Positions 5,943 through 61,590 of a stretch of 64,000 nucleotides of DNA are shown here, piece after piece; the stretch's first letter is position 1, and each line of letters opens with the position of its first letter. Location of the stretch: assembly GCA_963924565.1 (NCBI GenBank), contig OZ004608.1:5394001-5458000 (forward strand), written 5' to 3'. Origin of the DNA: Ascidiella aspersa. Taxonomy: Eukaryota. A program made the translations under genes and the position numbers. The notes below the pieces were generated by a model. The model did not search any database. It was not told the DNA's origin and was given only the letters and a program-made list of their open reading frames with translations.

Positions 5943-6547
5943 TTAAAGTGTTGTATTAAGCGAAGATTTCCACCAAGAGTTTCTCCAACCTTCGGGGCTA
6001 ACGCAACGACTAACCCATCTCACCAAGTCAGGCCCGAAAGTGTTGGCCAAGTAGATGGCAGCTTGGTTCAAATCAATTCTATTCGCCGAAGTAATTAGAC
6101 CGGGAACACCTTCAACAGAAACATATTGTTTCACCTCCACATGCGTCTCAACCTTCCAAGAGCCATTTGGTTGAACACGACCGCAGCACTTTTCCATTCC
6201 TGGGCCCCGAAGTACGAAGGCAATATTCTTCATCATTGTATCGCTGTAGTTAGATCGGAATGCAACTGCTATATTTTCCGTGCCGCAAGCTCCTGTGAAT
6301 ATTCTCTTAAGAGCCCAATCCACGTCATTCCAATAAGACGGGATGGGTTGGCCGTCTGACACCCTCAGCAATCCACAATTTCCAGCCAGAAAGGTACCAC
6401 TGGCATCAGGCCCATAGTTTACGTGCCACATTGTTCCGTTTTTCATTCCGTTCTCCGAGTACAGCGCTTCGTTCCATTTCCATAATGCCCGGGAATATTC
6501 GGAAGCGATAAGCGAAACGACCACCTCTCGAAAGACACTACCGCCAT
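5943..6547 (-). pseudogene. Orphan family type A copy 1, 1-bp frameshift
   Basis: Near-identical to 11808-12413 but reads GCTTCGTTCCATTTCC (~6466-6481) instead of GCTTCGTTTCCATTTCC. The ATG at 6547 is therefore out of frame with the EALYSE... body. Could be a consensus error. Confidence 0.8.
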
Positions 6548-6757
6548 TTTCAAACTAAAAATGCCTGCGCTACAACAAAAAGTTACAAGTTAAATAATAA
6601 ATTTACATTCAGTATGTTTGGTATTGCATTTGCACTCGGCAGATTTTTCAAGGTTAAATGAAAACTAAAATTAAATATTTTAACCTTTTTCAAATAAGGT
6701 TAGAATTGCAATTGCAAAACTCGCGAAAGCTACAAATCTAATTAGAATTACCTTTAA

Positions 6758-6908
6758 TTTATTCAATGAAACATATGCACACACATATGAGTGTTAACAA
6801 CTGAGATCTAGCCCTTCTAAAGCTGCTTTCTGACCAACGATTACGGCTTACATATCTCAGTCGGTAGAGCGACGGTCCCGGCTTGACCGGAGTCGTGAGT
6901 TCGAACCT
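6758..6908 (+). mobile_element. Truncated left arm of a TIR element carrying a tRNA-derived head (A box, B box)
   Basis: 6845-6908 has TCTCAGTCGGTAGAGC (A box), a CGGTC-7nt-GACCG anticodon-like arm and GAGTTCGAACCT (B box), but no 3' acceptor strand. The 5' part matches 29082-29170 and 30828-30915. Confidence 0.75.
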
Positions 6909-9900
6909 AAAATATCTAAAAGATTTAGGGTTTCCGTATCACATACCTTCTGTAGCAAGCAATAATCCCCTTTAACTAACAAGCCAAGTGTAGGCCTATC
7001 GACATTAAGCTGCAAAAATGCGCCTTAAATAGGAAAAAACATCAAAAGTCTAGTCTATCAAAGAATCTATCAAAATTGGGGTCGTCAAAGAATATCTCCA
7101 AAAATATGTCTATAGGTTCTACCGAAAGAAACCTTAAACTTAGCTAACAGTAGCCTAACACAATCAATCTTAGTTAGTAGTCGTATTTCTAAATATTTGG
7201 TGGCACAGTTGAACGACAAACTCTACTGCAGTGTCACGTTCCTACTATATTACATTCTTATTTCGACCTTATAAAGCGCGATTGTGCTGTTGTAATACTA
7301 ACTCTCGTTAACCATTGCCACCTAATTGCAACAACCTATCAAGCAATATAATCTAAACTCTGAAACAGCCTACTTCCCTTTAGTTTCGTTGCATGTCACA
7401 GTGTACGGTTTACTTAGCCCAAGCCACTACACAAAGTGCTAGAAACTAAGCAGACACGAGACGCGCTTACCGGAACGCCAAACCACAAAAGCACAGTTTT
7501 AGCTCGCAGCTCTATCCAGCTCACCAAGCGCTACGCTTGACCCGACAACTGCCGTCTGTAGGTGGGGAATTTCCAGGCGTTTTCGAGCACCAAAGAACGC
7601 GGCCGCTTTGAAAACGGCCAGCCCACTTCATAGGCTTCAGTTTGAGCCCTTCAACCAGCAAATGTGCAAAAAGAGACCAAGATAAAGCATAAAATACTAG
7701 TAGGCTACTTCTGAAGTGAAATATAACCCTCAAAAGGGTAGAAATTGATTTAAAATTTGATTTCACTTTAGAGTCGATCGGTTTGCTTTTTCAGGCGTAT
7801 TTTAACACCACAACACCTGGCCGCTTTATAATCCTTATTAAGAGCAATTCAACCAACTAGGTATAGAAAGCTACTCAAACTGGGAACAAAATACTAGTAG
7901 GTTAACTTTGAAATAAAATATAACCCTCGAAAGGCTAGAAATTGACCCAAAACTTAATTTCAAGTAAGAGCCGGCCGTTTTGCAGAGTGGCCATTTAGCC
8001 TTTAAGAGCGCCAAGGCAATAACACAGGGGAGAAAAGCGAGCGATGCCAACGCGTGGGCGCCGCAGACCTCGTGCCTTTGCCAGCATAAAATTGCGCCAC
8101 ACGCGAATAGACAAACACGAACCCCTAAAAGCTGCCTTGGTGATAACTGAACAAACCGTAATCTACGTTTTGCTGAGCTCGCTAAAATAGGTCGGCCTAT
8201 ACTTCTTTTATGTTTTAAAAGCATGACTATGTGTTGTCGGCATGGATGTTTTCAGTGATTTTACACAGCTTTAAACTAATGGGCTTGTAGCTATAATGCG
8301 TAGTCATAAATAATAATCCCAAATACCTGCAACTATGTAAAAGCTTGGATTAATATAATAATATGACAAGTTTAGGCCTTATAATATAATATGACAAGTT
8401 TAGGCCTTATTTAAAAATGACAGAAATCTATGCAAAGGTGTCGGTTTACCTTTTTTGTTACACATGTTACTCGTATTAAGGAAAACTGCAATCGCTTTAA
8501 TTTAAACCGTTACAATTGCTCAATAATACTTCCTGCAACTTATAGAGACGCTTACTTCTCAACCAGTGCAAATTGCTGAAGCGAAATGATGAACCAGTGC
8601 AAATTGCTGAAGCGAAACTGCTGTCAGCCTTCAACCTCGCTTAACAATTGGCAATAAAACTCCCTTTGGGCCGCTTTTTGAAACGCAGGCAGTTCTTTTA
8701 TTACTGCGAGAATGTAAAGTGTTTCTATATCTTAACTAAAATTAAAGTTATGGCGACACAATTATTTTTACTGATCTTTTCGTAAGAAATCAAAACTTAA
8801 GACTTTGGCAAACACAAGCACGAATTTAAATAATTTTAGCCAAGTATGCGTAAAGTTTCCGCAATTTTCTTAAGTATTCGAAAAATCTTGAGCAGAAAAA
8901 ATCTCAATAAATCTAATCATACAAAAGTCTGGCATTACCCTAAAACTGCCACGTTATAGTTTGGTTCACGACCTATGGGTTGGGAACAAATGATTCCACG
9001 CGTTCTGAGTTACTTTATTCTGTCGTTATAATAATCTTTATGACTTCCCTTAACAACGCGCATGCATGGTTTTCCAAACAACCTTAGTTTTTTGAAACTT
9101 TTGTGCATTAAGTCCTTCTGAAACAGTCGCTTATTATCATTGCTGTTTTGAAGCAAAAACCTATAAAAATCGTTAGCCAATACAGCATATCGAAAAATTG
9201 GAACTTCAGCGTTTGCTTCTCAAGTAAACTACGGAACAAAATTCGAAGCATACCAGCTTCGCTTAACTTGACTCATAAAACACTTCCCCTTTTCGTTTTT
9301 AAGGCATGACGTCAATGTCACATGGCGGCCACGCATCACTGAGCAGAGACATATCTGGTATACACTCAACACACTGCACGAAGCTCTTCAAAAGCAACAG
9401 GCCAGCGCTTTCTAAACGACATTTGTGCCATTTCCAAACTAAAGGTGGGGAACATTTAGCTGATTTATCTCCAATTGCCAAAAAAGTCAAAACAAACCTT
9501 AAAAGCGAGTTTTAAAAACAGTCGATTTGACCGAATTAACCAACTAAACTATAATGTAGTGCAAGGTTGGATTGAAGAGTTCAGTAAAAACGATTGTAAA
9601 GGCTACCCATTAAAGTTCTTATGATTGCACTGCCTACCCTCGAACTCCACATGCCTTTGTTACGGTTGGTGTAGCGTCTTATTTACATTTTAACTCATTT
9701 CCTTTATTAAAACTGAATAATAAATACAACTTCTGAGCGCCTTTTGCAACAAGTATTATGCGGGAAACGATTTTTTATTCAGCTGATATTGCAGGGTTTA
9801 ATTGTTCATCGCGGGTCTATTTATTTATTTTATTTCCCGTTCATATTCCATACTATGATCACAAAACCGCTTATATGACCAGAGGTAAAACGGAAATTCT

Positions 9901-11807
9901 TTTCGCGCTTCGCGCGAATCTCTTCTGTGTTGCTCGTATGTTCCACGCGATTTTTTTGGCAACTTGACGGACAAATAGCGTCCTCTGCTCAGTGGCACTC
10001 TCTCCAACGAAAGTTTAACAAACTTAGCCTAATATTTAAAATTTATATAAATATTACGTTAAGTTTGTTAAACTTTGTAGCACATCGGTAACTTAAAGTT
10101 TTAAAAAAGAAGAAAAAACATATAGGTAAGTTTTTCGTACGAAATTTCAAGGTATTTTAATCTTAAGTTGTGGGTCAACGCGCCCACAACTTAATAAACG
10201 CTAATATATCAAGCAATATACATTTTTAGTCGGTGCTCAATGCTTCACGTACCATCTAAATCTAAATTAAAGTTTGCATTTTCAAACAAATATAGTCGCA
10301 AATTTTTCGCGCTCCGCGCGACGTTTCGTGACTCTCTTTAAATCAGACTTAAATTGCACGTTTTCGCACAACTCTAAACGTAATAACAAATTGGTTGATT
10401 ATTTGTTTTACACCGTCAGAGTATGACGTCATATTGTATGTATTTTAGATCCTATATTTGACCCGGCCCGCCACAATATTTTAGGTTTCTCATGCGGCCC
10501 GCGGCTAAAAATAATTGCCCACCCCTGGTATAAGGCCTCGTCAGTACAAAAGCCGAAATTTACAAGGCCGATACAGTCACTATATTAATCCCTAATTTGA
10601 ATATGATCGCGTTTGGTATTTTACTTTACCTATGCCTGTTTTGTAGAAATATGCTGTTTTTAAAAAAATGTTACCGCGGCACATTTCTTTTCCATTAAGA
10701 GTTTCCCCCAGTTGAATTTAAAACAGTAAATAAAACGAAACAATTGTTGGCTTTACTATGGTTGTTTAGTTATGTTTCTTGCAATCTGTTCGGTTAGTTT
10801 GGTAACCGCTCGTCTTTCTGTTAAAGCAAATTGCACCGTCATTGTATTACTGTATGTTCGGACACGAACTCGCTTTCACTTTCTTCAATGTAATGAGCTT
10901 CGGTGAAATTTATCTTCACAGCAGGGCAAGGTCTCTTTGCAAATTGGAATCAAACTAACAATCGCGGGGTAACCTTTTGTTTTTAGTATGAATTGGTTTT
11001 TGATATCGATTCCCATAATTTTCTAGCAAAAAGTATTGCCATCTTATTACATGACAAATGACGCCATTTTACATTAGCGTTACCTTATACTTCCTATTTT
11101 TCAATTAAGTTTACTTAAAAACGATGGATCGTAAGTCAGGGTTAACATGGGTATATCGGTTTGTTTTGGGATTTGACTCGACGCTGCCCAAGTATATGAC
11201 GAGTACTGATATCACCACTCACGATTAGTTTATCTTCACCTAATAAATCGCAATGAATCGATATAATAATAACTATACATAACTATGATATGACCGCAAA
11301 CTCAGTTTACAGAATGTGAACAATCACGATAATTTAACAAGTAAACTTTATTGTTTAGGCAACTACAATTGATGCACACTTGAATATATAATGCGACAAA
11401 AAACAAACACATATATATCTCATGAAATATTTACTTTTTCTCGGTTCGGTAATTCTACATCACCTGATTTTGTATACTTATGGTTATACACAGCTAGAGT
11501 GAAGGTGGTGAGAAGCTGTAGATGCGAAAACCAATGCAGAAATACTTAAGCACGCAGATGAGGCGATAAACATGCAAACGTTAAGTGAACAGTTATCTTT
11601 ATATTTAAATTTCGTAAAAGCAAGGTAAGTATTTTAAGAAGCACATAACGAACAAATATAAATAATCATTTCAGGAGCACGATTACTTATGCAAGATTAT
11701 TTATTAAACATTTTAGACAAACACAATTAAGCCTCAATACTAAAACAAATTGATAATCGCATGTTTTTCAATATTGTGTTAAAAGGGATATATTAAAGAT
11801 CAGCGAA

Positions 11808-12413
11808 TTAAAGTGTTGTATTAAGCGAAGATTTCCACCAAGAGTTTCTCCAACCTTCGGGGCTAACGCAACGACTAACCCATCTCACCAAGTCAGGCCC
11901 GAAAGTGTTGGCCAAGTAGATGGCAGCTTGGTTCAAATCAATTCTATTCGCCGAAGTAATTAGACCGGGAACACCTTCAACAGAAACATATTGTTTCACC
12001 TCCACATGCGTCTCAACCTTCCAAGAGCCATTTGGTTGAACATAACCGCAGCACTTTTCCATTCCCTGGCCCCGAAGTACGAAGGCAATATTCTTCATCA
12101 TTGTATCGCTGTAGTTAGATCGGAATGCAACTGCTATATTTTCCGTGCCGCAAGCTCCTGTGAATATTCTCTTAAGAGCCCAATCCACGTCATTCCAATA
12201 AGACGGGATGGGTTGGCCGTCTGACACCCTCAGCAATCCACAATTTCCAGCCAGAAAGGTACCACTGGCATCAGGCCCATAGTTTACGTGCCACATTGTT
12301 CCGTTTTTCATTCCGTTCTCCGAGTACAGCGCTTCGTTTCCATTTCCATAATGCCCGGGAATATTCGGAAGCGATAAGCGAAACGACCACCTCTCGAAAG
12401 ACACTACCGCCAT
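11808..12413 (-). CDS. Orphan family type A copy 2, 201 aa (MAVVSFERWSF...WWKSSLNTTL), function unknown
   Basis: Open frame from ATG 12413 (context AAAATGG), homologous to nine paralogs in the window. AATAAA on the minus strand at ~11347-11352. Confidence 0.85.
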   Translation of the reverse strand: MAVVSFERWSFRLSLPNIPGHYGNGNEALYSENGMKNGTMWHVNYGPDASGTFLAGNCGLLRVSDGQPIPSYWNDVDWALKRIFTGACGTENIAVAFRSNYSDTMMKNIAFVLRGQGMEKCCGYVQPNGSWKVETHVEVKQYVSVEGVPGLITSANRIDLNQAAIYLANTFGPDLVRWVSRCVSPEGWRNSWWKSSLNTTL

Positions 12414-17270: not shown

Positions 17271-17855
17271 CTAAGTTTGCTGCCAAGAGTTTCTCCACCC
17301 TCCGGGGTTAACGCAACGGCTAACCCATCTCACCAAGCCAGGCCCAAAAGTTTTGGCCAAGTAGATGGCAGCTTCCTTCAAAGTAATTTCATTCGTCGAA
17401 GTAATTAGACCGTGAACACCTTCACCAGAAACATTATAATGCGTCACCGCGCTATGCGTCTCAATCTTCCAAGAGACATTTGATCCTACATATGTTACGT
17501 CACGACCGCAGAACTGTTCCATTCCCTGGCCCCGAAGAGTGAAGGCAATGCTCTTCGTCATTGTATCGCTGTAATCAGATCGGAATGCAACTTCTTTATT
17601 TTCCGTGTCGCGAGCTTCTGTGAAAATTCGGTTTACAGCCGATTCCGCGTCATTCCAACAAGACGGAATGGGTTGGCCGTCTGACACCCTCAGCAATCCA
17701 CAAGTTCCAGCCAACTGAGTACCACTGGCAGAAAACCTCACGTACCACATTTTTCCATCTAGCATCCCGCATTCCGAGTACAAAGCTTCGTTTCCGTTTT
17801 CGTACTGCGGTCGAATCCTCTCAACAGGAAAGGTGAAATGCCACACTTCCTGCAT
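17271..17855 (-). CDS. Orphan family type Q copy 1, 194 aa (MQEVWHFTFPVE...WRNSWQQT)
   Basis: First in-frame ATG is at 17855; the ORF-track start at 17888 is TTG. The frame is conserved across diverged paralogs, with in-frame indels between types. Confidence 0.88.
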   Translation of the reverse strand: MQEVWHFTFPVERIRPQYENGNEALYSECGMLDGKMWYVRFSASGTQLAGTCGLLRVSDGQPIPSCWNDAESAVNRIFTEARDTENKEVAFRSDYSDTMTKSIAFTLRGQGMEQFCGRDVTYVGSNVSWKIETHSAVTHYNVSGEGVHGLITSTNEITLKEAAIYLAKTFGPGLVRWVSRCVNPGGWRNSWQQT

Positions 17856-19794: not shown

Positions 19795-20086
19795 CTATAT
19801 AACTTGTTTCTGTTTAATGTCGCCGACCCCTATGAGATTTTTCTTTATAGCTGATTCGGCGTCTCGCCATTCGGACGGAATGGCTTGTCCATCTCTCATC
19901 TTTATAAACTGGCAATTTCCGGCCAGAAGAGTACTGTCATTTTCGACTGGGGAAAAACTTAATGTACCACATCTCGTAGCAAGCCATTCCGTCTGTTTCA
20001 GAGTAAAAAATTTCGTTTCCGAATTCGGAATCAAATTCCCTTTCCTCAATGGAACAGGTAAAGTGCCACACATTTGTGTCAGCCAT
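19795..20086 (-). pseudogene. Orphan family type B copy 1 (N-terminal half only), frameshifted
   Basis: MADTNVWHFTCSIEE...WYIKF is followed by a one-base shift at ~19950-19958 (GGGGAAAAACTT vs GGGGCAAACTT in the other B copies) into SPVENDSTLLAGNCQF...KQKQVI*. It also lacks ~90 bp of the upstream leader. Confidence 0.8.
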
Positions 20087-25414: not shown

Positions 25415-25614
25415 NNNNNNNNNNNNNNNNNNNNNNNNNNNNNNNNNNNNNNNNNNNNNNNNNNNNNNNNNNNNNNNNNNNNNNNNNNNNNNNNNNNNNN
25501 NNNNNNNNNNNNNNNNNNNNNNNNNNNNNNNNNNNNNNNNNNNNNNNNNNNNNNNNNNNNNNNNNNNNNNNNNNNNNNNNNNNNNNNNNNNNNNNNNNNN
25601 NNNNNNNNNNNNNN
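25415..25614. other. Assembly gap (200 N)
   Basis: Run of 200 n characters. Confidence 1.
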
Positions 25615-26920: not shown

Positions 26921-29900
26921 GTGGGCTCGGTGACCTTGGCTTTGCAGTGTCTTCTTGTGGAGCTAAATAGAAACAAATATTTCCCCTTGTAAAAAACATG
27001 TGAGGAAACACTGTAAATTTTCAATAAAAATATAAAAGTCATGAAATTTGCTAAAATTTGCAAACTTTCTATTTTCAGACATTTTGGAAATGACTTATGG
27101 TATCTTTAGTTTAAAAATGAATTTACAATAAATCGATAAAAACACACACGAAAAACAGAGAGTAACTAGATATAGGAGTAGATAGCTGTAGAGAACTAAA
27201 ACGATAACGTCCCACTTTTTTTTTTAAATCTGAATTAATCAGATTGAAACAAATTGATCAGAATTTTAAAATGTTTTATGTTGATTTCACAAAATTGCTT
27301 TACGAATCGAAATTTTCTGTTGATATGCCACCTTGTTGAAAGAAACTCTACATGTGGAAAACATTCATTTAGATCGCAAACCATTACCTAAAAGGTGAAA
27401 TAATTTCGGCACAGATGCCCGCCTAGTTTCACACGAGTACCGATACCAAAAGTGGAATATAAAATATTTCTGTTTAAAGTCTTTAAAAACCTAAAAAATT
27501 TCATTGAAAAAAATTCCCAAGTTTTCAGGGTATTTTTCTCGCAACGATGCGTGCAAATTAATCGCGGTCCAGCGAAAAGGGTCGCCATCGGTCTAATGCA
27601 AAAAAAAATCGGCGCTTAGCTTTCGCGGGATCTCAGGTATTCAGGCTGCGGACCAAACTCTCGGGTTTCAGACGAGTACCGATGCTACCATCTGGCATCG
27701 GGTTTCGGCTCTGATCCGATATTATCGCCTATCGGTCATCCCCAAACTTTTATTTTAGTTTTACCGATTTCTTCCGGTTCATCGGGAACGGGAGGAAGTG
27801 ACGCAGACATGAAGCTTACGGAGAACATTGAGAGGTTGGTCCGTTGGCCTGAAGCTTTTTGTACTCGCCTCAACAACCTGGACAGTTCTCGCTTCTCAAC
27901 CTCCAAATCAGTGCGCCGCCCGTTGCCCGAGTTCTCCAGCTTTTTTGCCACTGGAAGCAAAACATGTTTTCAAATTTACTTTGACTTGTGTTTCGGTTCA
28001 TTTAAGGGCCGTTGAAAGTAAAAAGTTTGTTTTCCAAATGTGTAACGTTAAACTGTTCGCTTTGAGTGGAAAATAATGCGAAAATGACTTATCGATTTTC
28101 ACAGATTTTAAAATTTTTTGACATTGAATACGGAAAAGTGTTATTTTATGTTCGTTGAATTTGACGAAATTTTATTATTAAACAAGTTGAATTGTACATG
28201 TGATACTCTAAAAATGAATTAAACCTTAAAATATTAATTTATTTTTAAATCGAATTTAATTAGTCGTAAGTGACCTAACTTGAAACTTCGAAAAATGACT
28301 TCGTGCGCACCGATTACATTGTGTAACAGACAAAACTATTTTGTTTGCTTCTGGGTTTGAAACAATTTCTCCGATCGCTTTTCAACTAAAAGCCTAAAAT
28401 TCACAACTTCGCTTTTATGGTTGAGGAATGAAGTACATAAAGTAGGATTTCTTTGAAATTCAAGATGTTGACTATCGAACAAAAAATATCATGACCAATG
28501 GTGGGTTATGAATAACACGCATAAGTTTAAAATTCACACGCTTTTCTTTTTGAAATTTCGCTTTTTGGATTGTGTAGTTAAGTACTTTAATTATGTGTTC
28601 TCTTGGAAATTCCAGTAAAGTGTCACCTCTCGATCGGACATTTCTTCTGACCAATGTAGGATTTATAAACACTACGCATAAGTTTAAAATTCACACAATT
28701 TTCTTTTTGAAATTTCGCTTTTATGGTTAAGAAGTAGTGTAAAGTAATTTACGAGATCCCTTCGGAATTCCTAAAGATGTTGAATCTCCAACAGAAATTT
28801 CTGCGGAACAATGTTTAGGTTTATACACAATAAGCGAGTACACCGAAAGCCATCGCAGACTCACCAAATCTGTCGATCAATGATACAAGCAAGGCAGGCT
28901 AGAAAAAATATCTAGCCTGCAGTGAGGTTCGAACTCACGATCTTCGGTCATACCGGGATCGTCGGTCCACCACCTAAGCAACACAGACTCAGAGAGAAGC
29001 GAGTCGAGAAATAACTATACATCAATGCTTGCTACTTCTTTTAGTACAAGCAACTTCATATTTAAATGGATCTGCAGTATCATATCATTCAATAAAAGAT
29101 CCACGCAAATATGTGTTCAACAAATGCTATCTCTTCTGAAGCTGCTTTTTGACCAACGATTACGGCTTCCGTATCATTAGTACACCGAAAGCCATCGCAG
29201 ACTCATCGAATATGTCGAGAAATTATAGTACAAGCAACTTCACAAAAAAAAGTTGTTGAACACATATATGTGTGTATCTTCCATTGAATGAGGATATAGT
29301 ACTAGTGACCAATGCTGGGTTTATAAATGGCACGCATTTACAATTTATCACCTTTGAGGGTGGTCGGTCTGGCTTTCGGGTCCTTGTTCCAGCACTTCTT
29401 CATTAACTCGGTCAGTAGGGTGAAGATCTTTCGGTCAGCCTCGTTGGTCAGGGCCGCCTTGACCTGCTTGACCTTGGCGGAGTCCGGTCGGGTTCCGGCT
29501 AGGATGAGTGTGCGAAGCACGTCTTTTCGGACGGTGGCGCCTTCGTAAACACGACCTCGGGTCACAAGCTCGTACAGAACCATGGCAAGGCTTGGGAAGG
29601 AAAGTTTGGAGTTAAGTGGCTTAAACCGGGGTTATGTCGAGTCGGTTGGAAACAGGGCTGCACAGTCGGTTAAAAAACAACCTAAAAAATCTGACTTCGG
29701 CCAAAAGAATGAACCCAAGTTCGACTCCAGCTAAAAAATTCAACCCAAGTCAAACTCCGGTGAAAAAAAGAACCAAAGTCCGACTTCGGCAAAAAAAGAA
29801 CCCAAATCCGTCTCCGGTCAAAAAAGATGAACCCCAAACCGACTCCAGGCAAAATAATGAACCCGAGTCCGAGTCCCTAGTCCCTAGTTCGACACTGGTC

Positions 29901-32900
29901 AATGTGAGTCCCGTGTCCAATTCCAACTCTACAGCCTGTATTTAACCCGTTTACGCAACTAAAGTAAGGTGGATATTCATTCAGCAATCACTCAAAGGTG
30001 TGCCATATATTTTGATGGTTGGCAAATATTCTGCCAATACCTATCCGTCTTTACGATTTACAGTTTTCGGTCTTATCAGTTTAAAAAATGTTGTTGCACA
30101 TGTGCACGTCGGACAGCATATACACATTGCAGACAATCTTAGCCAATACTTGAACATTTAGACCTTCAAAGATCTTTTGTGTCCATAACCTACATTAACA
30201 ATATATTATATTCAGTAAATAATTCACTATAGGTATTGATATGGACATGTCTATACCTAACCGAGTGTTGCTCATCCAACAGCATTATGTAATCACTCGA
30301 CGTTTCGACGTCCTATACAGAACGTCTTCATTAGGATACTGACATAGATTCCTTATAATGATATGCCAGTATCCTGATGAAGACTTTCTGAATAGGACGT
30401 CGAAACGTCGATTCATTATATATACTGCTGGATGAGCAACACTTGGTTATATATTATGCCTGGCAGCAATAGCTTATTTCATGTCTGTACATTTTACCCA
30501 CCACAGTCTTCAACCAACCGACATACCTGTACATGTCAGCAAGTCGACTAATCTCTTTGCCTTCCAGTACCTCTGGTGCAGCGTAGCGGGCAGTGTGCTG
30601 ACCAGTGGGCGCGATGTCCAGTGAGCTTGAGTCGCACTGGGACGCCCTGACGATGTTGACCGCCCCGAAGTCGGCCAACTTGACGTTCAAGTGTCGGTCG
30701 AGGAGGATGTTTTCGGGCTTGATGTCGCCGTGGAAGAAGAACTTATTGTCCGAAAAGTTGTGAAGGTAGTAAAGAGCCGAGTTGACTTGACCGAACAGGT
30801 CCTGCCTAAAATTGTGCGATGTTTTGATTTATTTAATGAAACATGCACACAAATATGTGTGTTACTAACTGAGATTTAGCGCTTCTGAAGCTGCTCTGTG
30901 ACCAACGATTACAGCTACTGCGTTTATTTATTGTTTGATTAATGCATCCAGAAGTAGATTTTTTAATCTGTTGCTTAAATAACAATAACAATATAAAGCA
31001 AAAAACACTTTTTCGACTGTAAAAAAAGTAATTTCGTAAATGATATGAACAAACGGCCTGCCCAAGAACTTTGGTATCAGAGTTATAAAGTCCCAACCAA
31101 TTTGCAATAAATAAAATCATTTGCAATAAATAAAATTCATTTTTTCAAGTTATTGTGTAACGCGAAATTTGGTCCGGGGCCAAAACTGATCCGGTCGGAT
31201 CAATTTTGGCGTTGGAACAGCCGCTAAAACAGGTCCGGCTAGGCCAAAACTGGTCCGGCCTAATCCTAACCCTAGCCAGACCTGTTTTAGCGGCTATTCC
31301 AACGCCAACATCGATCCGACCGGACCAGTTTTGGCGCTTGATTACGACCAAAATCGATCCGGCCGGACCGATTTTGGCCGGACCAATTTTGGCGTTACAA
31401 TTTCCATAATAAGTCATTTCGATTCAAGTCCTTGGAAACAAAACTAAATGTTAAACTACTAAAATTAGCAAATTCACTCCAATCCTAGCAATTAATCGCA
31501 TAGAAAACAGATAGATCAAGGGAAACAAAAGCAGAGTTGTACAATTAAAGTAAATTATGCACTATTTACCAAAAATGTGTTCGATTAAAACACTAAGAAT
31601 AAAGTAAGTCATTTTCGCAAATGAGTTAAGTCCAAGTCCAGCAATTTGGCCAAACGAATAAATCAAGCCAAGTCATTATGCCCGAAAAGACAAGTCAACT
31701 AATTGCAAGACATTGACTTAGGCGCACTCAAGCCAAGTCATAGTCATTACAACCACTTTTTTATAACTGTAAGCCTACCTTTGGTACACTCTGTATATCA
31801 GATGCTAATTTCCAAACACGTGTCTTACCTGAGTTCCCAGCTCAATTCGTGCTGTGAGCTGATGAGTCCGTCCAGGCTTCCACACTCGACGTATTCCAAC
31901 ACAATGGCCACTTTGTTGCCGTCCCAGTTGGAGAAGCCGTGGATTTTGACGATGTTCGGGTGCTCCATGCGAGCCAGTACCTCCGCCTCTCGTTTCACAC
32001 TGCAAGGAGATGCGGTTTTGTGACGCCAAATTTTCTGACGAGCCATTTCTTGGACTCAAAAGTATGGTTCACAAATTGAAGTGCCGTTTTTAATGCTTTA
32101 GGGTGCTCAGTTGTGTTTGAGTATCTTTAATATGATTTTTGCTCGTTGTTAATCCCCTTGATACAGCTCTTTTTTGCACAGTTAAAGTGCAATAAACTAA
32201 ATGACAATTTCCTAATATATGTAGAGAATTGAATGGGTTGTTCCAGTCCCGTTTATAGTGACATTAACTGTGGACCAGTGGTTCTTAACCGAAGGGGGGC
32301 AACAAATTTTTAGGGGGTGCGAGCTGCACTTTAATATCTAACATTTTTAAATGACTTTATTGGTTACATATTGTGTTAAATCTGCTTTCATGTTGTCCTA
32401 TGCTTTACATCAAAATTACACATGTGTAGGCTATATACGTAACTGAAGAAAAAAAAAGCGAAATAATTTTCGACGTGCTATACAGAACGTCTTTATCAAG
32501 ATACTGACGTTTCGGTGGATGCTGTAAGCCATACATACAATGTTGGTAACCACTGAACCATATCTAAATAGGTATGTACCAGTAGAGGAATTTGTGCACA
32601 TTAGTCAGGTACCTGACCTAACCCGCAATGTCACATTTTTTTTATAACATATACTTTTTATGATTATCTATAGTGGTATGGAGGGATGCTTTTAAGCAGC
32701 GGGAAAGAGCGAGGTTTGCAAGTAACTTGAAGAGCTTTGCAGGTAATTTAAAGCCCATGAAAGGCACTTTAGCACCTGTAAACTTCAAATATTGTCAACT
32801 CGGTCCAGTATTTCAACATAGATGTCATCTTACCGAGTCTGAGTATTTTGGGCGGACTTGTTAAATAGCTACTGTGTGTCCAGTTAGTATTAAAGCGCTG

Positions 32901-34107
32901 CTCCTAAATTCAAGAATCCTTGCGCCATAAGGTCTCAGGAAACACACGCTGTTAATATTTAACTATAAACTGGCTTCGCGAGGCCCAATAAAGAAAAGGT
33001 TCACAGTTTGAGATACTCGACTATACTTTGTGTTGTCAACATTTTCAAGAGTGAATTTGTGTTATTATACTAAAAGATAAAACGGTTATGTATAATAAAA
33101 TTACAGTGCTTTAAACAGGGGTGGATCAGGCTGGGGTGCATGCCCCCAAACTATAAATTTCGCCAACTATTGCCATGTAAATAGTACAGCTTGTTTCATT
33201 TCGATAATTGTGAACAAGTTCGCTCGAGAACAGCGGGTGTTTTACGATCAGTTTACATGACGTCATGTTATGACGTAATTTCATGACATCGTCTTTAAAA
33301 ATCTTCATGGACCTCCCTCCCCAAAAAAAATCCTGGATCTGCCCACGGCTTTAAATCAATCTTCTTTGTAAATGGCCATATTTGTTTAATTCTAAATAGG
33401 GTAATCAGGTGGCACTATAAAAGACAAATTGTATTGTATTCTCAACAAACTTTTGCACAACCGTGCTTTATGAGATCAAAGTAGAAGACCTACTACTGAC
33501 ATTTTTCTAGAAAACCCACCACTTAAAATTTCTACTTTGACATTATGAAGCACGGTTGTGCGAAAGCTAGTCGAGAATTCAATACAATTATAGTCGGTTT
33601 GATAGTGCCACCTGATTACCCTATTTAGCCTTAAATCAGACTTTCATCAAGAGAGTGGAAAATTGACTTACTCGTTGATGTGCTTCTCAATGTTTTCCTT
33701 CGTTCCTGTGATAGTGAAGCATTTCGCCACAACCTCGCCCTTTATCGGGTGGCGGCAAAACCGAACAGATGCGAAACCGCCACAGCCGAGGTAGTCAGTT
33801 TCGTCTGCACTCGTCAAAAGCTCAGTCGCACTTATGTCCTCGAGCTTGTTGGAAAACTTGATCTGTGTAAAGAATAGGATTTTATTCGTACGATGAAATA
33901 AATGTTAAAGCAAAATCAAACTTTCCAATCCCACTGCTCAAATGGGTATAGTGACGTCATAGAGACATCGCGCGGCGTCGTGGCAGGCCCACAGCGTCCG
34001 CGATCGCTTCCTGTATTGCGCAACAAGTGGTGGGTATTGCGCAAGATGCAGAGCCCGTAGGAAGCCAGGTTGGAATAAGGCTGCTGGCTTTCCGGTGTTG
34101 GCGACAT
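26921..34107 (-). CDS. RIPK-like (TKL group) Ser/Thr protein kinase, non-RD type; exons 34107-33922, 33862-33672, 31999-31829, 30805-30527, 29590-29352, 27950-27765, 26962-26921; 3' end not resolved
   Basis: Spliced translation gives LGCGGFASVRFCRHPIKGEVVAK (Gly loop and catalytic Lys), VKREAEVL..HPNIVKIHG, LEYVECGSL, HGDIKPENILLD, KLADFG, YAAPE, ADMYSLAMVLYE and CWNKDPKARPT. All junctions are GT-AG with matching phases. The first exon and start codon are less certain. Confidence 0.93.
28395..28830. repeat. Diverged ~157 bp tandem repeat (about 3 units) in a kinase intron
   Basis: ACGCATAAGTTTAAAATTCACAC..TTTTCTTTTTGAAATTTCGCTTTT at ~28517 and ~28674, with a partial unit at ~28397. Confidence 0.7.
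28835..29298. mobile_element. Composite TIR element(s) with an internal tRNA-derived Pol III unit (minus strand ~28990-28894)
   Basis: Inverted ~45 bp ends at 29082-29123 and 29253-29298. Reverse-strand GCTTAGGTGGTGGA.CG...GTGAGTTCGAACCTC is followed by the hairpin GCAGGCTAGA-TATTTTT-TCTAGCCTGC. AGTACACCGAAAGCCATCGCAGACTCA is duplicated. Confidence 0.7.
29653..29938. mobile_element. MITE with CAGGGCTG/CAGCCTG ends and ~30 bp internal tandem repeats (GACTCCGG)
   Basis: Terminal inverted motif plus 6-7 AAAAA..GAACCCAA.TCCGACTCCGG units. Related CAGGGCT-start sequences occur at 25091 and 48659. Confidence 0.65.
30258..30449. mobile_element. Palindromic element (two ~90 bp inverted arms), each arm with a Penelope-type hammerhead motif
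   Basis: Arms TAACCGAGTGTTGCTCATCC... and ...GGATGAGCAACACTTGGTTA. See the hammerhead feature. Confidence 0.75.
30369..30414 (+). ncRNA. Minimal type I hammerhead ribozyme motif
   Basis: GTATC-CTGATGA-A-GACTTTCT(GAAT)AGGACGTC-GAAA-CG-TC-GATTC: intact core, stem II, palindromic ACGT in place of stem III, and a 3-bp stem I (ATC/GAT). Confidence 0.6.
31156..31399. mobile_element. MITE with TGTAACGC...GCGTTACA TIRs and GGTCCGG subrepeats
   Basis: Clear terminal inverted repeats, repeated CCAAAAnnGGTCCGGCC motifs and a central CCTAATCCTAACCCTA. Confidence 0.85.
32276..32555. mobile_element. hAT-like MITE remnant (CAGTGGTT...AACCACTG) containing a degenerate hammerhead-family fragment
   Basis: 8 bp perfect terminal inverted match with no clear TSD. 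32467-32515 is homologous to the 30258-30449 arms. Confidence 0.55.
33116..33347. mobile_element. hAT-type MITE with 8 bp TSD GCTTTAAA
   Basis: CAGGGGTGGATC...GATCTGCCCACG flanked by GCTTTAAA at 33108-33115 and 33348-33355. Confidence 0.85.
33392..33628. mobile_element. Foldback MITE with ~95 bp inverted arms
   Basis: CTAAATAGGGTAATCAGGTGGCACTAT ... ATAGTGCCACCTGATTACCCTATTTAG, with the inverted match continuing inward to CAAAGTAGAA/TTCTACTTTG. Confidence 0.85.
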
Positions 34108-41370: not shown

Positions 41371-41964
41371 CTACCAAGTATACTTCCATCCACCGGGGTT
41401 GACGCAACGGCTAACCCATCTCACCAAGCCAGGCCCGAAAGTTTTTGCCAAGTAAATGGCAGCTTCGTTCAAAGTAATTTCATTCGACGAAGTAATTAAA
41501 CCATGAACACCTTCACCAGAAACATCATATTGTTTCACCTTCACATGCGTCTCAACCTTCCAAGAGCCATTTGATTCCACATAACCGCAGCACTGTTCCA
41601 TTCCTTGGCCCCGAAGAGTGAAGGCGATATTCTTCATCATTATATCGCTGTAACCGGACACGAATTCGCTTTCACTTTTTTCAATCGAGTCAGCTTCGGT
41701 GAAAATTCGGTTTACAGCCCATTTCGCGTCTTTCCAGTAAGAAGGAATGGTCCGGCCGTCTGAGACCTTCAGCAACCCACAAGTTCCAGCCAGCTGATTA
41801 TCATCATAGTCGTCATTTTCGTCGTCGTTGTGAACCGGCCCAAACTCCACGTGCCACATTGTTCCGTCTACCATTCCCTTCTCCGAGTAAAAATCTTCGT
41901 TTCCGTTTTTGTATCGCGGTCGAATCCCCTCAACGGGAAAGGTGAAATGCCACACTTCCTCCAT
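41371..41964 (-). CDS. Orphan family type E copy 1, 197 aa, acidic loop (HNDDENDDYDDN)
   Basis: ATG at 41964, open frame, homology to the paralogs. Confidence 0.88.
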   Translation of the reverse strand: MEEVWHFTFPVEGIRPRYKNGNEDFYSEKGMVDGTMWHVEFGPVHNDDENDDYDDNQLAGTCGLLKVSDGRTIPSYWKDAKWAVNRIFTEADSIEKSESEFVSGYSDIMMKNIAFTLRGQGMEQCCGYVESNGSWKVETHVKVKQYDVSGEGVHGLITSSNEITLNEAAIYLAKTFGPGLVRWVSRCVNPGGWKYTW

Positions 41965-43932: not shown

Positions 43933-44517
43933 CTAAGATTGCTGCCAAGAGTTTCTCCACCCTCCTGGATTGACGCAACGGCTAACCCATCTCACCAAGC
44001 CAGGCCCAAAAGTTTTGGCCAAGTAGCTGGTAGCTTGGGTCAAACCAATTTCATTCGCCGAAGTAATTAGACCGTGAACAGCTTCACCAGAAACATTATA
44101 ATGCGTCACCGCGCTATGCGTCTCAATCTTCCAAGAGACATTTGATCCTACATATGTTACGTCACGACCGCAGAACTGTTCCATTCCCTGGCCCCGAAGA
44201 GTGAAGGCAATGCTCTTCGTCATTTTATCGCTGTAATCAGATCGGAATGCAACTTCTTTATTTTCCGTGTCGCGAGCTTCTGTGAAAATTCGGTTTACAG
44301 CGGATTCCGCGTCATTCCAACAAGACGGAATGGGTTGGCCGTCTGACACCCTCAGCAATTCACAAGTTCCAGCCAACTGAGTACCACTGGCAGAAAACCT
44401 CACGTACCACATTTTTCCATCTAGCATCCCGCATTCCGAATACAACGCTTCGTTTCCGTTTTCGTACTGCGGTCGAATCCTCACAACAGGAAAGGTGAAA
44501 TGCCACACTTCCTGCAT
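43933..44517 (-). CDS. Orphan family type Q copy 2, 194 aa
   Basis: ATG at 44517; close paralog of 17271-17855. Confidence 0.88.
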   Translation of the reverse strand: MQEVWHFTFPVVRIRPQYENGNEALYSECGMLDGKMWYVRFSASGTQLAGTCELLRVSDGQPIPSCWNDAESAVNRIFTEARDTENKEVAFRSDYSDKMTKSIAFTLRGQGMEQFCGRDVTYVGSNVSWKIETHSAVTHYNVSGEAVHGLITSANEIGLTQATSYLAKTFGPGLVRWVSRCVNPGGWRNSWQQS

Positions 44518-56291: not shown

Positions 56292-56885
56292 CTACCAAGT
56301 ATACTTCCATCCACCGGGGTTGACGCAACGACTAACCCATCTCACCAAGCCAGGCCCGAAAGTTTTTGCCAAGTAAATGGCAGCTTCGTTCAAAGTAATT
56401 TTATTCGTTGAAGTAATTAAACCATGAACACCTTCACCAGAAACATCATATTGTTTCACCTTCACATGCGTCTCAACCTTCCAAGAGCCATTTGATTCCA
56501 CATAACCGCAGCACTGTTCCATTCCTTGGCCCCGAAGAGTGAAGGCGATATTCTTCATCATTATATCGCTGTATTCGGACACGAATTCGCTTTCACTTTT
56601 TTCAATCGATTCAGCTCCGGTGATAGTTCGCTTCACAGCCCATTTCGCGTCTTTCCAGTAAGAAGGAATGGCCTGGCTGTCTGAGACCTTCAGCAATCCA
56701 CAAGTTCCAGCCAGCTGATTATCATCATAATCGTCATTTTCGTCGTCGTTGTGAACCGGCCCAAACTCCACGTGCCACATTGTTCCGTCCACCATTCCCT
56801 TCTCCGAGTACAAAGCTTCGTTTCCGTTTTCGTACTGCGGTCGAATCCTCTCAACGGGAAAGGTGAAATGCCACACTTCCTCCAT
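56292..56885 (-). CDS. Orphan family type E copy 2, 197 aa
   Basis: ATG at 56885; paralog of 41371-41964 with a Q-like N-terminus. Confidence 0.88.
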   Translation of the reverse strand: MEEVWHFTFPVERIRPQYENGNEALYSEKGMVDGTMWHVEFGPVHNDDENDDYDDNQLAGTCGLLKVSDSQAIPSYWKDAKWAVKRTITGAESIEKSESEFVSEYSDIMMKNIAFTLRGQGMEQCCGYVESNGSWKVETHVKVKQYDVSGEGVHGLITSTNKITLNEAAIYLAKTFGPGLVRWVSRCVNPGGWKYTW

Positions 56886-57336
56886 TATTATCTTTATCGG
56901 AACAGCAGCAATCAACCAATAAAGGTTTTTTTTCAACAATTGAAAAATTCCTGCATGACCAAAAATGTGGAGCGAGTTAAAGCCAACTAAATGCAGCCAG
57001 AAAAGACTTAAAATAACTCAAGAAAAACGATTCTGACTATAAGAAAATGCCAAGCTTAAACCAGGGATTCGAACCGTCGATCAGGATTTTTAAGAACGGT
57101 TTTGAGCTAATTTGTTAAGTCTGAGCTGATTTATGCGAGATTTTTGTGAGTCGAACTGGATACGGAACCGTTGTATTAACAAATGGTCTTTCGGCTGTAT
57201 AGCGTTGTTAAATTGATATACGATGTCGTATTGCTTATATACATATATGACGTCATGGCTGTGTGTCAACATTTGACGTCGCCTTCCAGCAAAAAATCGA
57301 TTACGCCTTATAGCGATCCTAATTAAACCTATAGAT

Positions 57337-59310: not shown

Positions 59311-59895
59311 CTAAGCTTGCTGCCAAGAGTTTCTCCACCCTCCTGGATTGACGCAACGGCTAACCCATCTCACCAAGCCAGGCCCAAAAGTTTTGGCCAA
59401 GTAGCTGGCAGCTTGGGTCAAACCAATTTTATTCGCCGAAGTAATTAGACCGTGAACACCTTCACCAGAAACATTATAATGCGTCACCGCGCTATGCGTC
59501 TCAATCTTCCAAGAGACATTTGATCCTACATATGTTTCGTCACGACCGCAGAACTGTTCCATTCCTGGGCCCCGAAGTGTGAAGGCAATGTTCTCCATCA
59601 TTGTATCGCTGTAATCAGAACGGAATGCAACTATTCTATTTTCCGTGTCGCGAGCTTCTGTGAAAATTCGGTTTACAGCCGATTCCGCGTCATTCCAACA
59701 AGACGGAATGGGTTGGCCGTCTGACACCTTCAGCAATTCACAAGTTCCAGCCAACTGAGTACCACTGGCAGAAAACCTCACGTACCACATTTTTCCATCT
59801 AGCATCCCGCATTCCGAGTACAACGCTTCGTTTCCGTTTACGTACTGCTGTCGAATCCTCTCAACAGGAAAGGTGAAAGGCCACACTTCCTGCAT
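59311..59895 (-). CDS. Orphan family type Q copy 3, 194 aa
   Basis: ATG at 59895, open frame. Confidence 0.88.
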   Translation of the reverse strand: MQEVWPFTFPVERIRQQYVNGNEALYSECGMLDGKMWYVRFSASGTQLAGTCELLKVSDGQPIPSCWNDAESAVNRIFTEARDTENRIVAFRSDYSDTMMENIAFTLRGPGMEQFCGRDETYVGSNVSWKIETHSAVTHYNVSGEGVHGLITSANKIGLTQAASYLAKTFGPGLVRWVSRCVNPGGWRNSWQQA

Positions 59896-61290
59896 TATTA
59901 TCTTTATCGGAACAGCAGCAATCAACAAATAAATGGTGTTTTTTTAAACAATTGAAAAACTACCTGCCTGATTAGAATAGTAGAGCGAGTTAAAGGTAAA
60001 CAAATGCAGCGACACATTTGAGTCAGCCATTTTAGCTTTTAGCAAACAGGTTATTTTCCAACCGCTAGAATATCCCTGCAATAAAAAAAATAGAAGATGC
60101 TATTCACGGCCTCTGAAAGAGGTCACGTGATTTTACTTGGCTTCACTTATTTCAAAATCACCGTTTCTTTTATGCGCCAAATCGCACAAACTGAATTTAC
60201 TGTTAGAAAAATATGTCGACAAATTACCAATTTATGCAAAAGTTCAGTGCTGCGGAGTTGCCTTTAAAATTTCCGTTTAAGGATTTTTTTGGAATATCGT
60301 CAGTTAAATGGCACATCTTAGCTGAAACTCCCAACTTAATTATATCGCTTGATTTCTGGCATCAGCTGCAGCCCGATATTATAGTCTATACAGCTGTCTC
60401 AGCTAGGCTCGGCTCGCAAATTAAAGTATATTTAGTTTTTCCACATAAAATGTTAAAATGTCAACTATTAACAATGTTCATACTGTTCTGGCACCGTGTG
60501 AGTTTTGTATGATACAAAAATAACTAAACGAATACAACTGGCGTTACCGGGTGAAATAGAGTTTTTGCGGTGACTTATAAAGGACTTCTAGCGTTGCCTC
60601 GGTGATATTAAATAAACACCACTGGGCGTTACAAATGCCTGACATCGGGTTTCTTCTCTCCATAGAAAAGAAGGTAGTGGAACAAAAACACGCTACAAAG
60701 CTACACTAAACAACGAAGGCGTGCCCTGTTGAGCTGTTGAGAGAGTTGGCGAATAGAAATCAATCGGCCGTGACCAAAAAATGACTCTTCATCAGTACCA
60801 CTTCACCACTATTGCACACTATGCTGTAACATATAACCTATACACGATAGAGCAAAGACGAAGTGAGCTACACAACAGGACAAAGAGATTGAGAAGCGCA
60901 ATAAATCAAAACGCCACTTAGTTTAATGACTCTTTTGGTAAAGTGTCATTTCCACCGTTCGATGTCGCCCTTGAGTACAATTAATTAACCGCGATCAAAT
61001 GGCTGAACATTAATCTGGGCATGGCTGAACATTAATCGGTATTTCAAAAGCAAATTTTGCAAACGTTTGTTCAATGTGAACTGTTAGTCTACTATTAAAT
61101 TCGTCCTAAGTTAATAGGAATTTATTAACAAATCAAGCCCGGAATCTTTGCATTGGGTACGAAATAGGAAGTGAAAGAACTACAAACTTAAAAACTCGAG
61201 AAATATTGCATCGTTATTCACTTCATACTGGCCTACTATTCCAAGAGAAAATATTTGAGATTAAATAACTTCTATATAACTTGTTTCTGT

Positions 61291-61590
61291 TTAATGTCGC
61301 CGACCGACTTGTTGCTGTTTAATGTCGCCGACCCCTATGAGATTTTTCTTTATAGCCGATTCGGCGTCTCGCCATTCGGACGGAATGGCTTGTCCATCTC
61401 TCATCTTTATAAACTGGCAATTTCCGGCCAGAAGATTACTGTTATTTTCGACTGGGGCAAACTTAATGTACCACATCTCGTAGCAAGCCATTCCGTCTGT
61501 TTCAGAGTAAAAAATTTCGTTTCCGAATTCGGAATCAAATGCCCTTTCCTCAATGGAACAGGTAAAGTGCCACACATTTGTGTCAGCCAT
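61291..61590 (-). CDS. Orphan family type B copy 3, 99 aa N-terminal-half protein (or truncated pseudogene)
   Basis: ATG at 61590 (AAAATGG); same structure as 46506-46805. Confidence 0.55.
   Translation of the reverse strand: MADTNVWHFTCSIEERAFDSEFGNEIFYSETDGMACYEMWYIKFAPVENNSNLLAGNCQFIKMRDGQAIPSEWRDAESAIKKNLIGVGDIKQQQVGRRH

What the first reader, a model, noticed from the sequence alone, without database searches (positions are those of the whole stretch)
5943..61590. Ten-member expanded orphan protein family (~200 aa) in four diverged types
Seen: ten same-strand paralogs share the blocks W.F..., GNE..YSE.GM, MW.V.F, LAG.C.LL.V.DG..IPS.W.D, IAF.LRG.GME..CG, W.VETH, GLITS.N.I.L..A..YLA.TFGP.LVRWVSRCV.P.GW. 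Loops between blocks vary by in-frame indels (PDAS vs SAS vs PVHNDDENDDYDDN; CGYV vs CGRDVTYV), which argues for real coding selection. There is no signal peptide or TM segment from the true ATGs and no intron in the CDS. I do not recognise the family. Inference: a lineage-specific cytosolic family under birth-and-death evolution, a pattern typical of defence or recognition genes.
Basis: partly seen in the sequence, partly recalled or inferred. Interest (0 to 1): 0.85.

Follow-up and report, generated by a model that had tools for sequence, protein, structure and literature searches.

The report
Expanded sea-squirt gene family, kinase-linked domain
The window holds part of a real 25-gene tandem family encoding a small, confidently folded but undescribed protein domain. 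In another sea squirt the same domain forms the tail of a RIP-type signalling kinase, which hints at a role in immune or cell-death signalling, but nothing yet shows what it does.

Summary
The family is real. There are ten minus-strand loci in four types, but only six are intact: A2, three B and two C. A1 has a 1-nt deletion. The three D copies are N-terminal halves that share one truncation. The N gap (25415-25614) lies outside every copy.

Genome-wide there are 46 matches. All but one lie in a single ~210-kb cluster, and 23 ORFs are intact. The scan met this family before on adjacent DNA (s1-788745, 70 kb beyond this window).

The family is not a strict orphan. A profile search found 25 remote relatives, nearly all unnamed stand-alone ~200-aa ORFs. 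One is a Phallusia mammillata "RIPK1-like" protein in which the whole domain follows the kinase domain (hhalign 99.4%). A RIPK-like kinase gene also sits inside this cluster.

AlphaFold models are confident (pLDDT 85 and 95) and show two alpha/beta lobes. There is no Pfam hit and no significant PDB match. The C-terminal lobe repeatedly ranks Rep/origin-binding-domain folds first (Z 7.5, below the tool's noise mark) and lacks their catalytic motifs.

Evolution is by unit duplication, segment exchange and pseudogenisation. dN/dS is about 0.45 between types and about 1 between young copies.

Best reading: a new kinase-associated module. Its function is inferred only, and no expression data could be obtained.

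The parts
5943..6553 (-). A-type copy A1. It is 99% identical to A2 but has a 1-nt deletion at about 6473/6474 that shifts the frame after codon ~28. It is a probable pseudogene, or an assembly indel.
11808..12413 (-). A-type copy A2, intact, 201 aa from the ATG (MAVVSFERW...)
17271..17855 (-). B-type copy, intact, 194 aa. This is the protein that was modelled (pLDDT 84.6).
19801..20086 (-). D-type N-terminal half, truncated at about codon 100 and with a 1-nt insertion; a dead fragment
25415..25614 (.). Assembly gap (N). It lies outside every family copy, between D_20k and the kinase exons.
29338..33817 (-). Context: a multi-exon RIPK-like protein kinase gene inside the cluster. Exon ORFs lie near 33668-33817, 31825-32046, 30454-30848 and 29338-29583. 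The exons were searched one by one and were not joined.
41371..41964 (-). C-type copy, intact, 197 aa, acidic loop PVHNDDENDDYDDN, pI 4.9
43933..44517 (-). B-type copy, intact, 194 aa
46506..46805 (-). D-type N-terminal half (99 codons then a stop), with the same truncation junction as the other D copies
56292..56885 (-). C-type copy, intact, 197 aa
59311..59895 (-). B-type copy, intact, 194 aa
61291..61590 (-). D-type N-terminal half (99 codons then a stop), same truncation junction
7033..11300 (.). A 4.3-kb cluster-specific spacer lying 3' of the gene. Further copies are at 1195-5460, 12899-15751 (92% identical, partial) and 36656-40828. The copies are 92-100% identical although the adjoining genes are of types A, A, B and C.

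Best explanation
SHOWN. These are real protein-coding genes with an intronless CDS. They encode a ~195-aa soluble protein that consists entirely of one undescribed domain with two alpha/beta lobes. The window holds the left part of a ~210-kb cluster that contains all but one of the genome's 46 matches. The array grows by duplication of multi-kb units: a 5.85-kb A unit and a ~15-kb C-B-D unit. Copies exchange segments with each other. Copies die by frameshift or truncation. Selection is purifying over long distances and weak or absent between young copies.

INFERRED. In the ascidian Phallusia mammillata the same domain forms the whole C-terminal module of a RIPK1-like kinase, and here a RIPK-like kinase gene lies inside the cluster with a kinase-Kelch gene at its edge. 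The stand-alone proteins therefore most likely act in RIP-type kinase signalling (innate immunity, cell death or self/non-self recognition). They would be free sensor, adaptor or regulator versions of the kinase's tail, much as death-domain-only or CARD-only proteins relate to RIPK1 and RIPK2. The diversified loops and exchanged segments would supply different specificities.
For: Ten loci in the window. 46 genome matches, 45 of them in C2:5.40-5.60 Mb. 23 intact ORFs.

All indels among intact copies are in frame. dN/dS between types is 0.43-0.47 at dS 0.3-0.5, and 0.44 at dS above 1. The conserved blocks have omega near 0.3.

25 remote relatives at E<=1e-3 among 1.84 billion representatives, best 8.6e-19. 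Paralogs share contigs in other assemblies.

P0019 (CAB3265597.1, Phallusia mammillata, 'RIPK1-like') has Pkinase at 32-300. Residues 364-547 match the full domain profile at 99.4%, E 5.9e-22.

Kinase exons lie in the window at 29.3-33.8 kb on the same strand. A second kinase match lies 5 kb before the window.

The AF2 models are confident: pLDDT 84.6 / pTM 0.83 and pLDDT 94.9 / pTM 0.89.

Mosaic identity profiles are clear, for example C_41k against L019: 91-97% over the first two thirds and 62-71% over the last third.

The CDS diverges 1.6-2 times faster than the flanking spacer in three recently duplicated unit pairs, p = 0.066, 0.02 and 0.011.
Against: The kinase link rests on one fusion protein from one species. 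A region search found no second fusion. No copy in this genome is demonstrably fused to a kinase.

This genome has at least 79 RIPK-like kinase matches, so adjacency alone is weak. About 0.05 would be expected in 210 kb if they were spread evenly, but they are clustered.

Young duplicates have dN/dS of 0.5-1.6, which also fits relaxed constraint.

The homodimer prediction gave no answer. I found no site-level proof of positive selection, and gene conversion confounds such tests.
Confidence: 0.42

Rival explanations
1. The family is a ligand-binding or regulatory small protein family of two ferredoxin-like lobes, in the manner of tandem ACT domains. It would have no special tie to RIP kinases and would have expanded for metabolite, toxin or metal handling. 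The Phallusia fusion would be a one-off domain shuffle.
For: The best Foldseek PDB rows for both models are tandem-ACT or regulatory-domain proteins: 2nyi, the IlvA regulatory domain, SerB2 ACT and BT0572, with E from 2e-3 to 1e-2. The two lobes align weakly to each other (hhalign P 0.04), as expected for a duplicated alpha/beta unit. Only one kinase fusion is known.
Against: TM-scores are about 0.2 and no row reaches E 1e-3. No member matches the Pfam ACT family even at E 10. The fusion covers the whole domain and is statistically solid.
Confidence: 0.22
2. The C-terminal lobe is a catalytically dead descendant of the HUH Rep endonuclease / viral origin-binding-domain fold, and the proteins bind nucleic acid. 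Fused to a RIP-type kinase, the domain would act as a nucleic-acid sensor. It might originally have been captured from a virus or plasmid.
For: Two independent models from proteins only 25% identical both rank RepB OBD first: Z 7.5 with rmsd 3.1 over 89 residues, and Z 7.5 with rmsd 5.1 over 93 residues. Nanovirus M-Rep follows at Z 6.9 and 7.2. About 15 of the top 50 rows are circovirus, smacovirus, vientovirus, geminivirus or parvovirus Reps, SIRV ORF119, or the SV40, E1 and LANA DNA-binding domains. BFVD also returns CRESS Reps with local probabilities of 0.7-0.9. The order of secondary-structure elements in the C-lobe (b-a-b-b-b-a-b-a) matches what I recall for Rep domains. The invariant 'FTL' lies on the first strand, where Rep motif I sits. 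Both of these last two points rest on my own knowledge.
Against: Every Z is below 8, the level the tool says is typical for models with no true match. There is no HUH motif. The Tyr at the motif-III-like position is not conserved and is Arg in the A, B, C and full-length D (L023) genes; the window's own D copies end before this position. No member matches a Pfam or PHROG Rep family. No PDB sequence matches. B and C proteins are acidic, pI 4.9-6.1, which is unusual for DNA binders.
Confidence: 0.15
3. The array is a decaying or functionless array of recently duplicated ORFs. The ORFs stay open only because the copies are young.
For: Young pairs have dN/dS of 0.5-1.6. About half of the 46 loci are fragments. 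There is no expression evidence.
Against: ORFs stay open and indels stay in frame at dS 0.3-1.5, with dN/dS of 0.43-0.47 between types. The domain is conserved down to 22-30% identity in other genomes, with invariant core residues. AF2 confidence is very high.
Confidence: 0.1
4. The ORFs belong to a transposable element.
For: There are many copies with near-identical flanks.
Against: All copies but one lie in a single 210-kb cluster. The 4.3-kb flank occurs only in this cluster, and only a 640-bp insert inside it is dispersed. No transposase, integrase or RT domain is present.
Confidence: 0.02

Closest known systems
C-terminal non-kinase modules of RIP kinases (death domain of RIPK1, CARD of RIPK2, RHIM) and their domain-only adaptor proteins (my own knowledge of the family)
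   Same: In Phallusia P0019 the domain sits directly C-terminal to a RIPK-type kinase domain. It also exists as free-standing single-domain proteins. In this genome it is genomically interleaved with RIPK-like kinases.
   Different: The fold is a two-lobed alpha/beta sandwich, not a helical death fold or an amyloid motif. There is no sequence similarity. No homotypic or kinase binding has been shown (one search gave no answer).
HUH Rep endonuclease / viral origin-binding domain fold (RepB of pMV158, nanovirus and circovirus Rep, SV40 T-antigen OBD, papillomavirus E1 DBD)
   Same: These are the top structural matches for the C-terminal lobe in two independent models (Z up to 7.5). The order of secondary-structure elements is the same.
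   Different: The scores are below the tool's noise mark. There is no HUH metal-binding motif, no conserved catalytic Tyr and no profile match to Rep families. An extra ~95-aa N-terminal lobe is present, there is no helicase, and the proteins are acidic.
Tandem ACT / ferredoxin-like regulatory proteins (e.g. PDB 2nyi, IlvA regulatory domain, SerB2 ACT pair)
   Same: Two alpha/beta lobes of about 90 aa in a protein of about 180 aa. These are the best Foldseek rows for both models.
   Different: E is only 2e-3 to 1e-2 and TM about 0.2. There is no Pfam ACT hit.
Tandemly expanded, fast-changing invertebrate immune or allorecognition gene clusters (e.g. sea-urchin Sp185/333, genes of the Botryllus fuhc region; my own knowledge)
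   Same: A single large cluster, unit duplication, mosaic genes produced by segment exchange, many pseudogenes, and coding sequence changing faster than the spacers.
   Different: Those families are secreted or membrane proteins, or have documented polymorphism and expression. Here there is no signal peptide and there are no population or expression data.

Membership tests
HUH Rep endonuclease / origin-binding-domain superfamily | Rep-type alpha/beta fold (five-stranded sheet, b-a-b-b-b-a-b-a order) | tested here: inconclusive
   The C-lobe of both models ranks Rep/OBD chains first (Z 7.5, 7.2-7.4), but this is below the tool's Z 8 caution level.
HUH Rep endonuclease / origin-binding-domain superfamily | HUH metal-binding motif on the central strand | tested here: not met
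   No His-hydrophobic-His/Gln motif is conserved in alignments A3 and A10. P0003 has no His in the central strands.
HUH Rep endonuclease / origin-binding-domain superfamily | Conserved catalytic Tyr (motif III) | tested here: not met
   The position is Y in some remote members, R in the A, B, C and full-length D (L023) genes, and H, F or L elsewhere. The window's own D copies end at about codon 100, before this position.
HUH Rep endonuclease / origin-binding-domain superfamily | Sequence-profile match to Rep families | tested here: not met
   No Rep family among the Pfam hits of 24 members at E<=10. No consistent PHROG hit. No PDB sequence match.
RIP-kinase-associated C-terminal module (proposed here, not a curated family) | The domain occurs in one polypeptide with a RIPK-type kinase domain | tested here: met
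   P0019 has Pkinase at 32-300 and the full domain at 364-547, hhalign 99.4%, E 5.9e-22. This is one protein from one species.
RIP-kinase-associated C-terminal module (proposed here, not a curated family) | Physical or functional interaction of the free domain with a RIPK-like kinase | not testable with these tools
   Only genomic neighbourhood is available. The window's kinase is a multi-exon gene and was not joined for folding.
ACT domain (tandem) | Profile match to ACT plus the b-a-b-b-a-b fold in each lobe | tested here: not met
   No Pfam ACT hit. The Foldseek rows are not significant. The C-lobe has an extra strand.
Transposable-element ORF | Dispersed genomic copies and TE enzyme domains | tested here: not met
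   45 of 46 matches lie in one cluster. The flank is cluster-specific. No TE domains are present.
Expressed protein-coding gene | Transcripts that cover the ORF | not testable with these tools
The exact proteins are not in the collection.

The most novel reading that the evidence does not exclude
The family defines a previously unrecognised signalling domain of ascidian RIP-type kinases. Its C-terminal lobe would be an inactivated Rep/origin-binding-domain fold. The free, diversifying, segment-shuffling copies would act as a germline repertoire of sensors or decoys, possibly for nucleic acids or pathogen factors, feeding into the very large RIPK-like kinase expansion of this genome. That would be a chordate innate-immune or allorecognition module with no vertebrate counterpart.
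Probability: 0.15. Interest if true: 0.85.

Novelty: new variant of a known kind. Interest (0 to 1): 0.55.

Why it matters
Tunicates are the closest living relatives of vertebrates, and this genome carries an unusually large set of RIP-type kinases. No library searched here (Pfam, PDB sequences and structures, PHROGs, PADLOC) describes this domain. It folds with high predicted confidence, is fused to such a kinase in one ascidian, and has expanded into a shuffling 25-gene array in another. It would therefore be a concrete and testable entry point into how invertebrate chordates wire kinase-based immune or recognition pathways. Even if the kinase link fails, the family is a clean case of a new alpha/beta domain and of an array whose coding parts change faster than its spacers.

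Tried and rejected
- Pfam on the four types and on 24 family members gave nothing consistent.
- PHROGs and PADLOC gave nothing consistent.
- The word-index protein search with the B protein gave 0 hits. With alignment A3 it returned only 8 unnamed ENA proteins. With the P0019 tail region it returned only P0019 itself.
- The ESM Atlas gave no usable hit for either query.
- The PDB sequence profile search returned one chance row at E 0.94.
- Foldseek against PDB (twice) and BFVD gave no row at E<=1e-3.
- The GTDB genome contigs pattern scan with the remote subfamily found no bacterial or archaeal relative. The first attempt failed because the alignment was too diverse.
- The metagenome scan with P0001 returned one ORF-poor, eukaryote-like 6-kb contig with no informative neighbours.
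- Complex prediction on a B-protein homodimer gave 'no answer' (score 0.00, controls not run). This is neither for nor against binding.
- hhalign of the N-lobe against the C-lobe gave P 0.04, suggestive of an internal duplication but not established.
- The TE hypothesis is rejected on the genomic distribution.
- The literature search on RIP kinases in ascidians found nothing relevant.
- Rfam on the window gave no hit.

The exons of the window's kinase gene were searched one by one by reference. I built no joined (spliced) protein model.
Full report
**Observation.** The window is eukaryotic in character: 32-42% GC and very few long ORFs. tblastn with one representative of each type finds exactly ten family loci, all on the minus strand.

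Six copies are intact:
- A2 at 11808-12413
- B at 17271-17855, 43933-44517 and 59311-59895
- C at 41371-41964 and 56292-56885

A1 is identical to A2 over the aligned 5' stretch and 98.9% identical at the protein level over the rest, but it has a 1-nt deletion near 6473/6474 that shifts the frame.

The three D copies contain only the first ~100 codons. They end at the same 31-nt tandem-duplication junction, so they are copies of one truncated ancestor. D_20k has an extra 1-nt insertion. A full-length D gene exists elsewhere in the cluster (L023:1489-2064).

The assembly gap at 25415-25614 lies more than 5 kb from any family match. Nothing in the finding depends on continuity or reading frame across it. 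A copy hidden in the gap cannot be excluded.

**Extent.** The window is G000:C2:5394001-5458000 in a 308-Mb, 75-contig assembly. Earlier notes of this scan call it sea-squirt-like, and the only named homolog I found is from the ascidian Phallusia.

The family profile finds 46 matches. 45 lie in C2:5.40-5.60 Mb, forming a minus-strand sub-array followed by a mainly plus-strand sub-array. One divergent singleton lies on C4. Of 25 full-length matches, 23 have an intact ORF with a proper start. L010 and A1 are damaged at the 5' end.

The scan met this family before. Finding s1-788745, 70 kb beyond this window, describes the other part of the same cluster, and its follow-up also left the function unknown.

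**Gene anatomy.** The CDS is one exon. The proteins have no hydrophobic stretch compatible with a signal peptide or TM helix, and their pI ranges from 4.9 (C) to 7.6 (A).

In D, L024 and the C4 singleton, which are only 30-40% identical as proteins, a polypyrimidine tract with TTGCAG and TTTTAG acceptor-like sites and a 34-35-nt leader ending in GCTAAAATG is conserved upstream of the start. The leader differs in length by one base between the types, so it is not coding. I infer a 5'-UTR intron or spliced-leader trans-splicing.

B genes still carry a degenerate copy of that D-like leader and start about 130-190 nt upstream of their own ATG. AATAAA or ATTAAA signals lie about 425-490 nt past the stop in five of the six intact copies (572 nt in C_56k), and two copies have an additional earlier signal.

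**How the array evolves.** There are two repeat units: a 5.85-kb unit (A, A, then B) and a ~15-kb C-B-D unit.

A 4.3-kb spacer 3' of the gene is 92-100% identical in four units, although the adjoining genes are of types A, A, B and C, which are only 72-88% identical in the CDS and unalignable upstream. Near-identity starts about 490 bp past the stop, close to the poly(A) signal. The spacer occurs only in this cluster. Only a 640-bp insert inside it is dispersed genome-wide. This rules out a transposon explanation.

Identity profiles along the CDS are mosaic:
- C_41k against L019: 91-97% over the first two thirds, 62-71% over the last third.
- B against C: 91% at the 5' end, 72% in the middle, 92% at the 3' end.

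In three recently duplicated unit pairs the CDS has 1.6-2 times more mismatches than the flanking spacer (p 0.066, 0.02, 0.011; these comparisons are not independent). Both observations fit segment exchange between diverged paralogs, diversifying selection, or both.

Pairwise dN/dS is 0.43-0.47 between types at dS 0.3-0.5, and 0.44-0.72 at dS 0.8-1.5. Between young copies it is 0.3-1.6. A parsimony count gives an overall omega of 0.63, with about 0.3 in the conserved blocks and 1.0-1.3 in the inter-lobe linker.

So constraint is real over the long term and weak or diversifying in the short term. I could not show positive selection at particular sites.

**Relatives.** Pfam, the word-index search and the ESM Atlas gave nothing. 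A profile of ten diverse copies searched against 1.84 billion representatives found 25 proteins at E<=1e-3, the best at 8.6e-19.

Almost all are unnamed stand-alone ORFs of 150-225 aa. They lie on long ENA contigs, several per contig. One JGI contig that carries such a gene is ORF-poor, 40% GC, and also has acceptor-like sites just upstream of the ATG. That is eukaryote-like. A pattern scan of one genome per bacterial and archaeal species found no relative.

One hit (P0004) is a repetitive artefact.

The one named hit is P0019 (CAB3265597.1 / A0A6F9DQ76), 'receptor-interacting serine/threonine-protein kinase 1-like' of Phallusia mammillata. It has a protein kinase domain at 32-300, and residues 364-547 align to the whole family profile at 99.4% probability, E 5.9e-22.

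In this window a multi-exon RIPK-like kinase gene lies on the same strand at 29.3-33.8 kb, inside the cluster. I searched its exons separately and did not join them. Another kinase match lies 5 kb before the window.

The genome has at least 79 RIPK-like kinase matches. Neighbourhood alone is therefore weak evidence, and the fusion is the stronger argument.

**Fold.** AF2 on the B protein with ten family sequences gave pLDDT 84.6 and pTM 0.83. AF2 on the remote relative P0003 with 36 sequences gave pLDDT 94.9 and pTM 0.89.

Both models show two alpha/beta lobes, roughly residues 1-90 and 95-195. Foldseek found no PDB or BFVD match at E<=1e-3. Its best rows are tandem-ACT-like regulatory proteins with TM about 0.2.

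The Foldseek-independent search ranked Rep/origin-binding-domain chains first for the C-lobe of both models: RepB OBD at Z 7.5 and nanovirus M-Rep at Z 6.9-7.2. Many circovirus, parvovirus, geminivirus, SV40, E1 and LANA domains followed. The tool itself warns that Z below 8 is typical of models with no true match.

The family lacks an HUH motif and a conserved Tyr, and no Rep profile matches it. I therefore treat 'inactivated Rep/OBD-like lobe' as a reproducible lead, not a finding.

The two lobes align weakly with each other (P 0.04). A homodimer prediction gave no answer.

**Interpretation.** What is shown is a real, coding, tandemly expanding and segment-exchanging family that encodes an undescribed domain of high fold confidence, and that this domain is the C-terminal module of a RIP-type kinase in another ascidian.

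What is inferred is that the free copies work in RIP-type kinase signalling as sensor, adaptor or regulator modules, in immunity, cell death or self/non-self recognition.

'Orphan' is too strong. 'Defence or recognition' is still a hypothesis, now with one independent hint.

The main weakness is the complete lack of expression data.

Noticed in passing
window 29338-33817 (-): A multi-exon RIPK-like protein kinase gene inside the family cluster. No Kelch or other C-terminal domain exon was recognised between it and the D copy at 20 kb. The N gap at 25415-25614 may interrupt its 3' part.
   Followed up: partly
G000 genome-wide, e.g. C3:32.6-37.9 Mb and C2:2.4-2.8 Mb: There are at least 79 matches to a RIPK-type kinase domain, many in tandem arrays. 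This is a very large kinase expansion.
   Followed up: no
window 9886-10527, 4048-4689, 39509-40150: A ~640-bp dispersed repeat lies inside the cluster-specific spacer and is absent from the B unit. At least 35 copies occur on all large contigs at 92-95% identity. It has an internal ~67-nt inverted segment and is probably a non-autonomous transposon.
   Followed up: partly
window 17900-18100, 44560-44760, 59930-60130 (-): Each B gene carries, 130-190 nt upstream of its own ATG, a degenerate copy of the D-type acceptor, leader and start (ATGGCTGAC..., reading MADSNVSLHLF...). It is either a relic of a partial 5' duplication or a potential uORF.
   Followed up: partly
window 11320 vs 40850 (boundary of the spacer): Near-identity (98-100%) between the A and C units starts about 490 bp past the stop codon, close to the poly(A) signal. 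The diverged island therefore coincides with the transcription unit.
   Followed up: partly
window 23810-24097 (+) and 47387-47791 (+): A repeated ORF of 95-134 aa (MFIFSCCSSQPLLILLRDWNG...) with no Pfam hit; a repeated element of unknown nature.
   Followed up: no
window 2033-2386 and 7871-8224 (-): A 117-aa ORF inside the conserved spacer with no Pfam hit; probably a chance ORF.
   Followed up: partly
L031 (G000:C4:1322790-1323371, +): The only family member outside the cluster. It is intact, about 30% identical to the cluster genes, and has the same conserved leader. It may be the ancestral single-copy gene.
   Followed up: partly
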